Shown here in pieces: positions 46,287-52,635 of a DNA stretch of 64,000 bases. The translations under genes and the position numbers were made by a program. The notes under the pieces were generated by a model that saw only the letters and a program-made list of their open reading frames with translations, did no database searches and was not told where the DNA came from. The DNA is from Tubulanus polymorphus (taxonomy: Eukaryota; Animalia; Nemertea): positions 1,054,001 through 1,118,000 of the forward strand of contig NC_134031.1 in the NCBI RefSeq assembly GCF_964204645.1. The letters are read 5' to 3'. Each line of letters opens with the position of its first letter. Position 1 is the stretch's first letter.

Positions 46287-46426
46287 GAAAAAACGGAAGC
46301 ATACTTCCTAGGAATATTTTGTATAGAAGCGTTACTGAAAATAGTCGCGTTAGGATTTGTATTACATAAAGGATCATATCTTCATAATATTTGGAACATA
46401 ATGGATTTTGTAGTCGTAGTAACAGG
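46287..46426 (+). CDS. cac: Cav2 exon IS2-IS3: [47 protein letters not shown]
   Basis: 140 nt, ttacag acceptor and GTAAGT donor, canonical sequence. Confidence 0.97.
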
Positions 46427-47679
46427 GTAAGTAGAAACCCCCGAGAGCCAGTTCCGCAGTTTTATGTTCAGATTTGACTCTTAAAGAGATCTAAAGAAAT
46501 GAACTATTCTAACTCTTTAACGGTTGAATTTCACCAATAATCATTATTAATCGGGCCAGTTTTGATTTGTTTCTACCGATTCCGGAATACTGGTGGGTCC
46601 GTTTCAACGGATACGCGCTCGACCTATTTTGGAATAGCAGTCTGTAAAACCTGAACGACCGGCAGAGAGTTTGTAATCTCTGGAATTGTTATAACTAAAC
46701 CAGAAAACGTTTTATCGAAAACCTACCTTTATTTCAAAACTAATGACAGAAAACTAGAGTGAAATTTTGATTATTGATATGATGCAGTGAGTGGTCCATC
46801 AGTTGCCCACCCTAGAAATGTGTAAAAGAGGGTATCACAACTATTGAAATTTAAGCCTATTTCATCGCTCAAATTTCACAGACATTTCAGTAACACAAAG
46901 TTGATTGTATCCACCATCTTGAAGCACCAGCACTAACTATGATTACCACTTAATCCTAAAATCCAACTGAAAGTCCTGTAGATCCCAACTATTTAAACTG
47001 AATCATCGTCAACCCTACTCTATGTAATCTAGGCCTACAGAACGTCCTTCACTGGGAACTGTGTTTCGATATAGTGCCCTCTGCTACGATGAAAGTTTGC
47101 CTTGTATACAATGTCTATGTGGTGACCGCAATTAGTCGTGGTGACCAGTCAAGTGTGGTGGTAACTACTCACTTGGCATAGAGCCTATTATTCTCCGATA
47201 ACTTGTCCGGCCTATTGCCTGAAATTTTCACTATTTTCCTAATACAAGGAATAATGATTTTTTAATACATTTTTCAACGGCCATTCTTTAGAAGGGCTCA
47301 TATTTCACTAATACACATGGCAAAACTAGAATATATAAAAAAGATTCAAAACATAATTTTTTCAGCTCATAGTATCAACTTATATTTCCGCTTTGCAAGT
47401 TCAATTAAGATGTTAGAAACTCATAAAGTGCTCATTCAGGCGTAGAGGGTTCACGTTTTCGCACAAGTATAATTTCATTTTGACTTCTTAATCTTTTGTC
47501 TACTAGTGTTATTATTTATCAGAAAACCAAGATCAATTGTTATTATCCATTTTAGAATTTCATTTATATTTCTGTCTATTTTTGACTAACAAACAATGTT
47601 TTCTGTGGGTCGTTCAATTGATTTTTAGTGCCGTAGATCGAAATAAACTGGATTAATTGTGTTTTCGTTATTTAACCAG

Positions 47680-47771
47680 GTTATTAACATTTTTTGTTCC
47701 GGGGTTCGATCAGCCTGGTGCTCGAGCCCTCAGAGTGGTTCGACCATTGAAGTTGGTCACCGGGTTTGAGA
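47680..47771 (+). CDS. cac: Cav2 mutually exclusive IS3-S4 exon A: LLTFFVPGFDQPGARALRVVRPLKLVTGFE(S)
   Basis: 92 nt, ccag and GTAAGT boundaries, phase 2 to 1, S4 pattern RxxRxxRxxK. Confidence 0.88.
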
Positions 47772-47982
47772 GTAAGTCAGATAGAGCTCGCAGTCAATTA
47801 TTGCATCACATATTTAGAGATGAGTTTTCTGCGTAGGTCATACATATGCAGCAGTATATGCATTATTTGTTAATTATGTTATGGCTTTACAGCTAGATAG
47901 ATAGACCCCATCAATATTTCAGTTGATTTTTTTTTCATCACTAAACTGTAAAGTAACATCTCTTCTATGATTGATTTACTAG

Positions 47983-48077
47983 GATTTGGTATTGTATTTC
48001 CCCGAGCTCGCCGGCGGGACAACACGCGCGCTACTACAGGGTTTTACGCGTGTGTAAATTATTGAAAAGGTTCCACC
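47983..48077 (+). CDS. cac: Cav2 mutually exclusive IS3-S4 exon B (divergent): IWYCISPSSPAGQHARYYRVLRVCKLLKRFH(R)
   Basis: 95 nt, ttactag and GTAAGT boundaries, same phases (2 to 1), no stops. The RxxRxxRxxK register sits at exactly the same distance from the donor as in exons A and C. Confidence 0.75.
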
Positions 48078-48128
48078 GTAAGTCGTGGTCAAACTTGTGA
48101 AAGAAGAAGTGGATGAACCGGGTTATTA

Positions 48129-48312
48129 GCCGCATTCACACCATTTAGAACGGTCTAATTAGAATAAATTTTGGGGTAAATACTCGTGGTGACATCTTGT
48201 GGGGCCAGCGATAATTATCTGAAGCCATGTGTGTGAACTCGCACTCTGATTTGGCCCATCTCACGGACGGACTCACATAGAACGGTCTAACTAGTGATAG
48301 TGTGAATGCGCC
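48129..48312. mobile_element. MITE with TA target-site duplication, just downstream of S4 exon B
   Basis: TA|GCCGCATTCACAC...GTGTGAATGCGCC|TA; internal direct repeat TAGAACGGTCTAA.TAG. Confidence 0.65.
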
Positions 48313-49105
48313 TATTGTCTTGAGCTTGCATCTGATTCAGGGGCGGATCTAAAGGATCAGTTTCATAGTACTTCCGATCTTCTAATTTTCCTAGGCCCGC
48401 CCCTGCAGCTTTTCACCAGAAAAAAATCTTAGGGTGGAAATGAATTCAACCCTTCTACGAAAAAGAAAAAAATATCATAATCTTGTTGCTATTTGATCAC
48501 TTTTCAAAATACAGTTTGTTCCAAGCATCGAAGCATGCTGGAGCTCATATTGTCCATAGGGGTGAAGATGTACGTTACAAGTCTCGCGCAGTAATTAGCA
48601 ATTTTCAAGTAAAATCCTCACAGCGTATATAAGACCGGTTCGATCTCAGAAACACAAAGATTTGAGTATTATTACCCTCTTATATATTAAGAATGGTATT
48701 AGTATAAACGGATAATGTTATCTATGCAGAAGAAGAGAATCGGTACATTTTATATATCGATATTCTTCGTATGGTTACATTTTATAAAGCATATAATACC
48801 CAAAACGAGTAGAACATGAAAAGAGACACAAACAGTTGAAATTGGTTTCTATTTTGGCTGAGAGATGAGAAATAATGATCGTTCATTTTTTGGGGGTTTG
48901 CTATTATAGATTTGTGATCGTATTTTGTATGATATAATGCATGCTTGCTTTAAAAAGGCTCATTCAGACACGTGGATGCAACAGTCAGTAGTAAATGTGT
49001 GATGTTAGGACAATGAAGGGCATCGTTTGATGATACGGTTTTGAACTAACTCTGCTGTGTGTTTGCGCAACATCCTCAAAATTATCCAAATCCTTTTTCC
49101 TTTAG

Positions 49106-49206
49106 GTTCATAACCTTATTTGCAAATAATCAGTCCTCGTTTGATTTGAGAACACTTCGAGCGGTCAGAGTGCTGCGTCCTCTAAAACTCGTCTCTGGCA
49201 TTCCAA
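49106..49206 (+). CDS. cac: Cav2 mutually exclusive IS3-S4 exon C (canonical): [33 protein letters not shown](S)
   Basis: 101 nt, ctttag and GTACGT boundaries, canonical Cav2 IS4. Confidence 0.96.
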
Positions 49207-49922
49207 GTACGTATATATGTATATACTAATTCTGGACGTTTTATTTTTGAATTTTACACGGGATTCACAAACTGTGCATCTCATTTTTTCTCACACCATT
49301 CTTTAAATATATAAATATATATATATATGATATGATAGTACAGCATTTTGAGAAGTTGGAAGATCTCTAAATACATGTGATAATTGAAATGAGACCATTT
49401 CAATCGACGTTTAGAATTCTGTGTTCAACTAGTATTTCTAATGCTGTTCTATTCTACGCGATCAAACATTCCATGAATGTTTTCAATCGCACTCATATTT
49501 CTAATCTTTCCTATGTTTTTTGTCGATATACTTTCCCTCTGTGTGTTTTTCTGCTTATCCTCTCTTCGGTCTCACTTGTCTGTCTGTCAATAGATTTCAT
49601 TTTCAGAAATCAAATCTCTGTAAGTATTGATATAAGTCTGATTAGCTGTAGCACTGTCATTCAATATCGTCTAACAGTTTTCTGTTTTAGGCACTGGGTA
49701 TCGATTAATAGATATTTCATTGTTGTTAAATTGATCATTTTCCTGAAATTGAATTTGATAATGAGCTCTTCATCGACAAAATGAAATAAATCAATTCATT
49801 TAAGTTAAATTGCTTCGATTGAGTACTACTATTACTACAAAGGAAAATATCCGTGCCCTTAAAAATCTATTGACCTTTTCTTATGAAGAAAACGTAATAT
49901 TATCGGGTTCTTCCTATTGCAG

Positions 49923-50078
49923 GTCTTCAAGTGGTTCTGAAGTCAATCATTCGTGCTATGGCCCCACTGCTCCAGATCGGTCTCTTGGTGCTGTTCGCTA
50001 TCGTGATATTTGCCATTATAGGTTTAGAATTTTATGAAGGAAACTTCCATTTCACGTGTTTTTTGTGCAGTAGTGACC
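49923..50078 (+). CDS. cac: Cav2 exon IS4-S5 linker/IS5: [51 protein letters not shown]
   Basis: 156 nt, tgcag and GTAAGT boundaries; overlaps track ORF 49931. Confidence 0.97.
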
Positions 50079-51237: not shown

Positions 51238-51341
51238 ACAGATGATGTTTATGGTCAATCTACAAATTGGATGTACTTCATACCGTTAATCATTCTGGGC
51301 TCATTTTTAGTCCTCAATCTCGTTCTGGGCGTTTTAAGCGC
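51238..51341 (+). CDS. cac: Cav2 mutually exclusive IS6 exon a: [34 protein letters not shown](A)
   Basis: 104 nt, ctttag and GTACGT boundaries, phase 0 to 2; paralogous to the exon at 51843. Confidence 0.88.
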
Positions 51342-51842
51342 GTACGTAATTTTGTCGCCATTCGCTCGCTCGATGCTTGTGCGCAGGAAGTGGTTTGAAG
51401 CTGACCGAGCGTTAGATGTACACTTCAACTCGTATCCATTGTTTCTCTTAAAGCCTAATGCACAGATATTACCAATGTTCTGGACACTGGGCCCTTCTTC
51501 CACTGTATTCTGAACACCTTCCACCCAGTGTCCTGAACACCTTCCACAGTGTCTTTCTACAGCTTAACATTATCTAAGTCTTAAGTTTAGTTATCCAAAT
51601 GATGGTTATCAAATCATTATTCAAAGTCAAGTATCCCCAGGATATCGCAAATAGGATCTGATTTGGACCTCTATGATATACATAAAAAGCCCATGTTGTT
51701 CCCTTACGATATTTCTGTGCATTAAGCTTCACATATCCTGGATCTTCACCAGGTTCTTTCCAATGGAACTGTGTACATCTTCCGTTCAAACTAAGAACTC
51801 TTGCGGCTTGATCATATGAATTTTTTGTATATTCTTTTTCAG

Positions 51843-51946
51843 ACCGATGATGCCTTAGGGAACGGCTTCAACTGGTTTTACTTTATTCCTCTTATTATAC
51901 TAGGCTCCTTTTTTATGCTCAACCTAATTCTTGGTGTGTTAAGTGG
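51843..51946 (+). CDS. cac: Cav2 mutually exclusive IS6 exon b (canonical): [34 protein letters not shown](G)
   Basis: 104 nt, tttcag and GTAAGT boundaries, phase 0 to 2. Confidence 0.95.
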
Positions 51947-52635
51947 GTAAGTTGAACACACTGAATGAATCTTATGTCATCAAGGCCGATCTTAAAACAA
52001 AAGCATTCTCCCTTGGTAGGGATTTAAACCTGCATGGCATTGCGCAACTCAGTCATGACATGAAACCCTGCCCGATTAGCCCAAGTGGGTAGGTTAGCCG
52101 CCTCGTTCAGGCATATTTCACGGACAATGGAATCACCCTACTAGAATAAAAATACTATTTCTGATCGGCTAATAATGACATGATGGCTAAGAGAAGAAGT
52201 ACCCGCGCACTCGTGCTAATCATAGAGGTTTTTTTGTCGTGGCAGATTGTCGCGATGCTATCATGTTTGAATCCCTGCCGAGGCCGATCTTAAACAATAT
52301 GAATTCCTATCCATATCTTTCACTACAGCTCTCTATATTTTGTTGTATAGATGCGAAACTCGCCTGAGTCTGTTGCTGATCGAAGTTCGAATTTATTTTT
52401 AAAGACTTGCCTTATTTAGCATCTTTTGAAGATATATTTAGCTTGAGCCTTCGTTATCATAATTTTGCTCGACTTGCTATCAGCGATGAAACTTATTACG
52501 GCCAATTTATTCCTTTTGCTATCAAACGATCTAAATTTAAAAGATTTTTCTATATAAAAAAAAAAAGTTGTGGCGATTGCCGGAAGTTTACTTTGAGCGT
52601 TTTGTAATCGCGTTCGACTGATGAAAATCTTACAG

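What the first reader, a model, noticed from the sequence alone, without database searches (positions are those of the whole stretch)
47680..49206. Three-way interchangeable domain I voltage sensor: a cassette of three mutually exclusive S3-S4 exons
Seen: three exons (92, 95 and 101 nt; all phase 2 to 1; all with AG/GT boundaries) lie between the IS3 and IS5 exons, and each carries an S4 charge register at the same distance from the donor. A: PGA-R-AL-R-VV-R-PL-K-LVTGFES. B: QHA-R-YY-R-VL-R-VC-K-LLKRFHR. C: [20 protein letters not shown]. Each length is 3n+2, so including none or two shifts the frame, which points to mutual exclusion. Known: Drosophila cacophony has a pair of mutually exclusive IS4 exons, whereas vertebrates spread Cav2 diversity over three genes. 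Inference: this single Cav2 gene chooses among three sensors with different gating-charge number and position. I do not know a described three-exon version.
Basis: partly seen in the sequence, partly recalled or inferred. Interest (0 to 1): 0.9.

Follow-up and report, generated by a model that had tools for sequence, protein, structure and literature searches.

The report
Three alternative voltage-sensor exons in Cav2
A ribbon-worm (Tubulanus polymorphus) presynaptic-type calcium channel gene carries three interchangeable exons for its first voltage sensor: the standard one, an ancient alternative shared with molluscs, flatworms, annelid-like animals and sea urchins, and a very divergent third one seen nowhere else, whose use in RNA could not be tested.

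Summary
Exons A (47680-47771, 92 nt), B (47983-48077, 95 nt) and C (49106-49206, 101 nt) lie between the IS3 and IS5 exons. All have AG/GT borders, the same phase and an S4 charge register at the same distance from the donor. Skipping all three or including any two gives a premature stop.

The window encodes RefSeq XP_074655928.1, the Cav2 channel of the nemertean Tubulanus polymorphus. That single model uses only exon C.

Exon A is not new. It belongs to an old alternative IS4 exon type: 92 nt, first gating arginine replaced by Pro, [DN]QP motif, KLV(T/S)G(F/I)E tail. This type occurs in flatworm and Biomphalaria Cav2 genes, where no C-type form was seen. It occurs as an alternative RefSeq isoform in Pomacea, Haliotis and the sea urchin Lytechinus. 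In four metagenome contigs it lies 1.2-2.1 kb upstream of the C-type exon.

Three IS4 variants already exist in Haliotis RefSeq models, so a three-way cassette is not unique.

Exon B has no homologue. It looks like a diverged copy of A: codon positions 1 and 2 are conserved and position 3 is saturated (p=0.001), and the only variant seen in it is synonymous.

No RNA run was available, so use of A and B in Tubulanus is unproven. Earlier scan notes on this concern this same window only.

The parts
46287..46426 (+). Constitutive IS2-IS3 exon; ends with GG of a split Gly codon, donor GTAAGT
   Evidence: 100% match to P0234 residues 178-218
47680..47771 (+). Exon A: alternative IS3-S4 exon of the ancient 'A type'. 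92 nt, R1 column is Pro, short S3-S4 linker, tail KLVTGFE
   Evidence: 63-67% identical to flatworm and Pinctada A-type exons. Same 92-nt architecture in metagenome loci L007, L009, L010, L011. No differences in the second sample's contigs that cover the exon
47983..48077 (+). Exon B: divergent third IS3-S4 exon. 95 nt, R1 column is Gln, no S4 Pro, basic tail KLLKRFHR. Unique to this locus
   Evidence: single copy in the genome; no homologue; codon positions 1/2 conserved against A, position 3 saturated; 48016 G>C, one low-depth contig, synonymous GCG>GCC
49106..49206 (+). Exon C: canonical IS3-S4 exon with R1-R4 and K5; the one used in RefSeq XP_074655928.1
   Evidence: 100% to P0234 residues 225-257
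49923..50078 (+). Constitutive IS4-S5 linker/IS5 exon; begins with GT, which completes the split codon
47614..47625 (+). Motif TCAATTGATTTT, 66 nt upstream of exon A
   Evidence: Exact matches to TCARTWGATTTT occur only 3 times in 64 kb, all in this cluster
47919..47930 (+). Motif TCAGTTGATTTT, 64 nt upstream of exon B
   Evidence: (D17)
49862..49873 (-). Reverse-complement copy of the motif, 50 nt upstream of the IS5 exon. Possible pairing partner, but weakly supported
   Evidence: (I14, I21). Not supported by duplex energies or by other species
48159..48315 (.). Dispersed repeat of about 150 nt in the B-C intron. Not part of exon B
   Evidence: at least 34 other copies in the genome; exon B itself is unique

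Best explanation
This is a cluster of mutually exclusive exons encoding the end of S3, the S3-S4 loop and S4 of domain I in the single Cav2 calcium channel gene of Tubulanus polymorphus.

Exon C is the canonical sensor with five charges. Exon A is the local copy of an ancient alternative exon that lacks the outermost gating arginine (R1 is Pro) and has a loop three or more residues shorter. That exon type lies upstream of the C-type exon in other spiralians and is used instead of C in database isoforms of molluscs and a sea urchin. Exon B lies 211 nt downstream of A. It is most likely a lineage-specific duplicate of A that has diverged strongly while staying under protein-level constraint.

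Exclusivity is enforced by reading frame. Every exon is 3n+2, so zero or two exons give a premature stop, presumably removed by nonsense-mediated decay.

Inferred function: each isoform has a differently tuned domain-I voltage sensor. Human Cav2.1 R192Q (an R1 neutralisation) and Drosophila IS4A/B suggest that the R1-less A and B forms shift activation voltage or kinetics.

Shown here: the exon anatomy, the frame logic, the orthology of A and C, and past constraint on B. Inferred: actual splicing of A and B in Tubulanus, and every biophysical effect.
For: - Anatomy and frame logic.
- Gene identity: P0234 (XP_074655928.1, T. polymorphus) matches the window's exons from 879 onward, with the cleanly bounded alignment pieces at 100%.
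- A-type exon in Schistosoma, Echinococcus, Pinctada, Biomphalaria, Pomacea X8, Haliotis X7 and Lytechinus X7: always 31 residues, R1 replaced.
- In each species the isoform has either the A-type or the C-type directly between ..VVVTG and LQVV...
- Genomic order A then C, 1.2-2.1 kb apart, with the same split codons and GTAAGT / GTA(C/T)GT donors, in four metagenome contigs.
- B: single copy, not part of the neighbouring repeat.
- B is closer to A than to C (27/64 against 20/64 nt).
- A-B identity at codon positions 1/2/3 is 12/12/3 of 21 (Fisher p=0.001; positions 1+2 against random p=2e-5).
- B has an open frame, AG and GTAAGT intact, and hydrophobic-polar-S4 order preserved.
- The only variant seen in B (one contig, depth 5, second sample) is synonymous.
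Against: - No RNA evidence at all for this species.
- RefSeq gives one isoform, with C only.
- B lacks the RPLKLV.G motif. Its Pro and Val columns are kept in at least 90% of the 19 aligned IS4 exons, and only B departs from them.
- B has no homologue among about 470 fetched Cav proteins or in the metagenome scan.
- The other loci with an A-C pair have nothing S4-like between A and C.
- The codon-position test shows past constraint, not present use.
- The leech Helobdella has only one IS4 exon, so the cluster can be lost.
Confidence: 0.5

Rival explanations
1. The cluster works as a two-way switch (A or C), as in other spiralians. B is a former exon or a rarely used, non-productive one that no longer contributes a working channel.
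For: - B alone breaks the near-invariant RPLKLV.G motif and the S4-S5 linker start.
- B has no homologue anywhere.
- Other A-C loci have no middle exon.
- B is not annotated.
- Its 3' splice site has a poorer pyrimidine tract than C's, and the last exon base before the donor is C, not G.
Against: - After saturation of synonymous sites, B still has an open frame, both splice sites (donor GTAAGT), the 3n+2 length and all four or five charges in register.
- Positions 1+2 are far more conserved than position 3.
- The only variant seen is synonymous.
- A long-dead exon should have lost these features.
Confidence: 0.35
2. Only exon C is ever used in Tubulanus. A and B are both leftovers of old duplications.
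For: The single RefSeq model uses C. The leech locus shows that the alternative exon can be absent.
Against: A is 63-67% identical in protein to A-type exons of flatworms and Pinctada and 43-53% to those of gastropods and a sea urchin. It has the exact 92-nt length, intact splice sites and the same position upstream of C. That degree of conservation is not compatible with a relic. A single RefSeq isoform more likely reflects thin RNA data.
Confidence: 0.08
3. Exon B is not channel sequence at all: a chance open frame, part of a mobile element, or an exon of another transcript.
For: A dispersed repeat lies 80 nt downstream of B. B is richer in CpG and has a higher GC3 than A and C.
Against: The repeat covers 48159-48315 only, and B is single copy. 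Phase, length class, splice sites, charge register at the same distance from the donor and residual similarity to A are jointly far beyond chance.
Confidence: 0.03

Closest known systems
Drosophila cacophony (Cav2) mutually exclusive exons IS4A/IS4B (Bell et al. 2025, eLife, PMC11828482)
   Same: Same gene family and the same place in the protein (S4 of domain I). Mutually exclusive use. The alternatives differ in charge number. In flies they set activation voltage and synaptic localisation.
   Different: - The fly has two exons, both 99 bp / 33 aa, and IS4A carries one more positive charge.
- The arthropod-type alternative (P0255 barnacle; P0010, unnamed, which I take for a dipteran) keeps R1 and reads ..[17 protein letters not shown].
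- Here the alternatives are 92 and 95 nt, lack R1 and have a shorter loop.
- They are therefore not orthologous exons.
A-type alternative IS4 exon in database models of spiralian and echinoderm Cav2 (Pomacea XP_025112114.1 isoform X8, Haliotis cracherodii XP_071097064.1 isoform X7, Lytechinus variegatus XP_041481260.1 isoform X7; the only IS4 form seen in Schistosoma/Echinococcus and Biomphalaria Cav2 genes)
   Same: Exon A shares the exact length (31 residues including split codons), R1 replaced, the [DN]QP motif, the tail KLV(T/S)G(F/I)E, and the position upstream of the C-type exon.
   Different: These are predicted models. I found no paper that describes this exon type. In Tubulanus the exon is not annotated.
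Three alternative IS4 exons in Haliotis RefSeq models (P0252 C type, P0334 second C-like type, P0327 A type; the second C-like type also in H. asinina P0208 and H. rufescens P0216)
   Same: A three-way choice at the same exon position in a single Cav2 gene.
   Different: The third Haliotis exon is a near-canonical copy with R1 and the full [11 protein letters not shown] motif. Tubulanus B is highly divergent (R1 is Gln, Pro lost, basic tail) and resembles A, not C. Lineus longissimus likewise has a second canonical-like exon (P0279) and no B-like one among the 15 isoforms seen.
Human CACNA1A R192Q (familial hemiplegic migraine; neutralised R1 of IS4)
   Same: A and B naturally lack the charge at the R1 column. 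That R192 is the R1 position is from my own knowledge.
   Different: It is a point mutation on a canonical background, not an exon swap. The functional parallel is inference only.

Membership tests
Cav2 (non-L-type high-voltage-activated) calcium channel alpha-1 subunit | Four-domain channel protein with Ion_trans, GPHH and Ca_chan_IQ domains, most similar to Cav2 orthologues | tested here: met
   The window's exons match P0234 (XP_074655928.1, 'voltage-dependent calcium channel type A subunit alpha-1-like', T. polymorphus), with the cleanly bounded pieces at 100%. Pfam PF00520, PF16905 and PF08763 are precomputed for P0234.
Mutually exclusive exon cluster | Tandem homologous exons of similar length with identical phase and their own splice sites | tested here: met
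Mutually exclusive exon cluster | Inclusion of none or of two exons is non-productive | tested here: met
   All three are 3n+2. The +2 frames of B and C contain stops. The skipped form stops inside the IS5 exon.
Mutually exclusive exon cluster | Mature mRNAs contain exactly one member, and each member is used | not testable with these tools
   No RNA run was found for this organism, and read laying showed DNA contigs only. For orthologous A and C exons in Pomacea, Haliotis and Lytechinus, RefSeq isoforms contain one or the other.
Ancient A-type IS4 alternative exon (spiralians and echinoderms) | 92 nt; R1 replaced; [DN]QP before R2; tail KLV(T/S)G(F/I)E; located upstream of the C-type exon | tested here: met
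   Exon A:
Ancient A-type IS4 alternative exon (spiralians and echinoderms) | The same features, applied to exon B | tested here: not met
   B is 95 nt, lacks QP, Pro and the KLV.G.E tail, and gives no significant match. It shares only the absence of R1, the short loop, and residual similarity at codon positions 1/2.
Drosophila cacophony IS4A/IS4B pair | Two 99-bp exons; the alternative has one extra positive charge and keeps R1 | tested here: not met
Docking-site/selector RNA pairing (Dscam-type control of exclusive splicing) | A docking site complementary to a selector next to each variable exon, conserved among relatives | tested here: inconclusive
   The motif TCARTWGATTTT is exact only upstream of A, upstream of B and, as reverse complement, upstream of the IS5 exon. 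However, there is no copy next to C in the same position, duplex energies are not outstanding, and the motif is absent from L007 and L011.

The most novel reading that the evidence does not exclude
Exon B is a functional, lineage-specific third domain-I voltage sensor. It has Gln at R1, no S4 proline, an extra in-register Lys and a strongly basic start of the S4-S5 linker. The resulting Cav2 isoform would have gating or coupling unlike any described Cav channel. Together with the ancient R1-less exon A, this would mean that a single Cav2 gene has tuned its domain-I sensor by exon choice since before spiralians and ambulacrarians split.
Probability: 0.4. Interest if true: 0.7.

Novelty: new variant of a known kind. 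Interest (0 to 1): 0.5.

Why it matters
Most invertebrates have one Cav2 gene for fast transmitter release. How they obtain the functional range that vertebrates get from three genes is an open question. So far it has been addressed experimentally only for the Drosophila IS4A/B pair.

This work shows that a different alternative IS4 exon, lacking the outermost gating charge, is shared by nemerteans, molluscs, flatworms, annelid-like animals and a sea urchin. It is therefore probably very old. I found no paper describing it.

Tubulanus adds a third, extreme variant. If A and B are spliced in, they are natural experiments on R1 neutralisation, on S3-S4 loop length, and (for B) on loss of the conserved S4 proline in a presynaptic calcium channel. 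All of this can be tested by expressing the isoforms.

Tried and rejected
- RNA evidence. The look-up of sequencing runs with a 10-kb, mostly intronic query returned only three DNA-type runs.
- Genomic loci of relatives. Lineus, Pomacea and Owenia gene ranges exceed 100 kb, so no DNA was returned. Three Lineus isoforms were not on record.
- A Lineus-like metagenome contig (L006) has more than 4 kb of intron upstream of the IS5 exon and no S4 exon on it.
- Helobdella (L005) has a single IS4 exon.
- Transcript fragments. A search with P0234:160-320 found no nemertean fragment. The best hit was 75% identical over most of the query and none exceeded 86%.
- Exon B. It was too short for the search for related loci. 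A degenerate pattern for YYRVLRVCKLL found nothing in metagenome contigs. There was no blastp match among 358 stored proteins, and a motif screen of the further fragments found no B-like IS4.
- Docking/selector idea. It is not supported by duplex energies or by conservation.
- B as part of a mobile element: rejected.
- My first neutral-decay simulation timed out. I replaced it with the codon-position test.
- Joined step left out. All searches used single exons by reference or stored database proteins. No structure of a B- or A-containing sensor was predicted.

Full report
OBSERVATION

- A: 47680-47771, 92 nt, preceded by AG, followed by GTAAGT.
- B: 47983-48077, 95 nt, preceded by AG, followed by GTAAGT.
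- C: 49106-49206, 101 nt, preceded by AG, followed by GTACGT.

The upstream exon (46287-46426) ends ..VVVT + GG. Each alternative exon begins with G, which completes Gly. Each ends with one base that, with GT at 49923-49924, gives Ser (A, C) or Arg (B). [17 protein letters not shown]... follows.

The translations are:
- A: LLTFFVPGFDQPGARALRVVRPLKLVTGFE
- B: IWYCISPSSPAGQHARYYRVLRVCKLLKRFH
- C: [33 protein letters not shown]

Counted from the donor, the basic residues are in one register. At the R1 column A has Pro, B has Gln and C has Arg.

A scan for four basic residues at three-residue spacing finds only these three open frames between the IS3 and IS5 exons, on either strand. The joint chance of an open frame, splice dinucleotides and register is negligible.

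Frame logic:
- A second alternative exon would be read in its +2 frame, which has stops in both B and C.
- Skipping all three stops inside the IS5 exon.
- The introns are 1253, 211, 1028 and 716 nt, so steric exclusion is not needed or likely.

WHAT THE GENE IS

A search with the IS5 exon, followed by a region search, recovered P0234. This is RefSeq XP_074655928.1, 'voltage-dependent calcium channel type A subunit alpha-1-like [Tubulanus polymorphus]'.

- Its IS3, exon C and IS5 sequence is identical to the window.
- It maps on window exons from 879 onward; the cleanly bounded pieces match at 100% and the others lose a few points where they run over exon ends.
- The window lies in a 268-Mb, 77-contig assembly.
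- P0234 is the only member of its 90% cluster, so RefSeq has one isoform, with exon C.
- A and B are unannotated and single copy in the genome.
- Exon C also finds the IS4 exon of a second channel gene on contig 3.

EXON A IS AN OLD ALTERNATIVE EXON

Among the hits, a full-length Schistosoma japonicum Cav2 (P0004) carries [31 protein letters not shown] directly between ..VVVTG and LQIVLKS... A region search with that segment, followed by inspection of cluster members, gave the following.

The same exon type is always 31 residues with R1 replaced. It has [DN][QE]P (QS in Haliotis) before R2 and, in the spiralian copies, a tail KLV(T/S/Y)G(F/I)(E/Q)S. It occurs in:
- Flatworms: Schistosoma, Trichobilharzia, Echinococcus, Mesocestoides and others.
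- Pinctada.
- Biomphalaria, where every listed isoform whose IS4 could be read carries it.
- Pomacea isoform X8, with the other 14 listed isoforms C type.
- Haliotis cracherodii isoform X7.
- The sea urchin Lytechinus variegatus isoform X7 ([31 protein letters not shown]), with the others C type.

In each isoform the variable segment sits directly between the IS3 and IS5 sequences, so the models use one exon or the other.

A degenerate DNA pattern for the A-type tail found five metagenome contigs. In four of them the 92-nt A-type exon lies 1.2-2.1 kb upstream of a C-type exon on the same strand. It starts G|TTA.. and ends ..GAG A|GTAAGT. The C-type exon ends ..CCA A|GTA(C/T)GT. No S4-like frame lies between them. 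By their other exons, two of these contigs are nearest to annelid (Owenia) Cav2.

The order A then C and the splice architecture match Tubulanus. The leech Helobdella has only the C-type exon, so the pair has been lost in places.

The arthropod alternative (barnacle P0255 and the unnamed P0010, which I take for a dipteran) keeps R1 and has an extra Arg in ..VSR.PS. This fits the description of Drosophila IS4A as a 33-residue exon with one more positive charge. It is a different exon type.

THREE-WAY CASSETTES ELSEWHERE

RefSeq models of one Haliotis cracherodii gene carry three IS4 variants:
- C type (P0252).
- A second canonical-like exon, [35 protein letters not shown] (P0334). It is also the representative form in H. 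asinina and H. rufescens, P0208 and P0216.
- A type (P0327).

Lineus longissimus, the other nemertean, has C type and a second canonical-like exon (P0279, isoform X32) among the 15 of 33 isoforms that could be listed.

The statement that no three-exon version exists therefore does not hold for the databases. I found no paper that describes any of these.

EXON B

B has no significant match to any domain of 358 stored Cav proteins. No B-like IS4 showed in the further fragments, and a pattern scan of metagenome contigs found nothing. It is not part of the dispersed repeat of about 150 nt that lies downstream at 48159-48315.

It nevertheless keeps the layout of an IS3-S4 exon: a hydrophobic S3 end (IWYCI), a polar loop (SPSSPAGQH) and an S4 with R2, R3, R4, K5 plus a further in-register Lys. 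It loses the proline and the LV.G motif that the other 18 aligned IS4 exons keep.

Over the last 21 codons, which align without gaps:
- B is nearer to A (27/64 nt, 8/21 aa) than to C (20/64 nt, 7/21 aa).
- A-B identity by codon position is 12, 12 and 3 of 21.
- Third positions are at or below the random level of 0.26.
- First and second positions are conserved (Fisher p=0.001; against random p=2e-5).

A copy left to drift for that long would be equally randomised at all three positions. It would rarely keep an open frame (0.13), both splice sites and the register.

In contigs of a second sample, the only difference inside B is 48016 G>C (one contig, depth 5). It changes GCG to GCC, both Ala. 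No difference was seen in the covered parts of A and C, and the remaining differences were intronic.

I conclude that B arose by duplication of the A-type exon and was maintained as coding sequence for a long time. Whether it is still used cannot be decided here.

REGULATION

The motif TCARTWGATTTT occurs exactly three times in the 64-kb window:
- 66 nt upstream of A.
- 64 nt upstream of B.
- As reverse complement, 50 nt upstream of the IS5 exon.

A one-mismatch copy lies at 49587. This looks like a docking/selector arrangement, but three things count against it. Selectors upstream of the exons with a docking site at the downstream end would loop out the chosen exon itself. Duplex energies to the putative docking site are not outstanding. 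The motif is absent from the two other loci that include the IS5 exon. I record it only as a lead.

LIMITS

No RNA run for this organism was returned. The three runs laid are genomic.

Gene ranges of Lineus, Pomacea and Owenia were too long for DNA to be returned.

All searches used single exons by reference or stored proteins.

VERDICT

- The anatomy is real.
- A/C is a conserved, probably very old, mutually exclusive pair. A is the R1-less member.
- B is a Tubulanus-lineage addition with signs of long-term protein-level constraint but no evidence of present use.
- This is a new variant of a known kind (mutually exclusive IS4 exons in Cav2).
- It is of moderate interest, mainly for the undescribed deep conservation of the A-type exon and the extreme sequence of B.

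Noticed in passing
window 47614-47625, 47919-47930 (+), 49862-49873 (-), 49587-49598 (+, 1 mismatch): The 12-mer TCARTWGATTTT is exact only three times in 64 kb: upstream of A, upstream of B and, as reverse complement, upstream of the IS5 exon (13 matches at up to 1 mismatch against 4.7 expected). It may be a splicing control element. It is not conserved in L007 or L011.
   Followed up: partly
window 48159-48315: A dispersed repeat of about 150 nt with internal inverted arms (48127-48144 / 48297-48314) lies in the B-C intron. At least 34 further copies, 66-89% identical, occur across the genome.
   Followed up: partly
window 48016 and 47950: In contigs of a second sample (X2), exon B carries G>C at 48016 (synonymous, depth 5). 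One base is missing at 47950, 33 nt upstream of B's acceptor.
   Followed up: partly
window 51238-51306 and 51831-51947: Two candidate IS6 exons both match Cav2 proteins. The RefSeq model P0234 uses the second.
   Followed up: no
P0163, P0312-P0320 (Biomphalaria); P0004, P0151-P0161 (flatworms): In Biomphalaria and in flatworms the A-type IS4 is the only form seen in a whole Cav2 gene. Biomphalaria names include 'R-type alpha-1E isoform'. An alternative exon may have become fixed in a paralogue.
   Followed up: no
L006 (JGI metagenome 3300040954); L007-L011 (GenBank metagenome contigs JAAUYG, JAAUXW, JAAUYA, JAAUXT): Animal Cav2 loci sit in metagenome assemblies. L006 is 88-94% identical in protein to Lineus. 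L007 and L011 are nearest to annelid Owenia. They gave the genomic order of A-type and C-type exons.
   Followed up: partly
P0001 (702 aa, representative library): A predicted protein consists of about nine tandem repeats of an IS5-exon-like segment (..GLQVVLNSIVRAMVPLLHIAL..) with flanking read-through. It is probably a tandemly duplicated exon/intron unit or an assembly artefact in some vertebrate-like genome.
   Followed up: no
G000:C3:9947763-9947843 (L004): A second IS4-like exon ([26 protein letters not shown]) lies on another contig. It is probably the Cav1 gene of the same genome.
   Followed up: no
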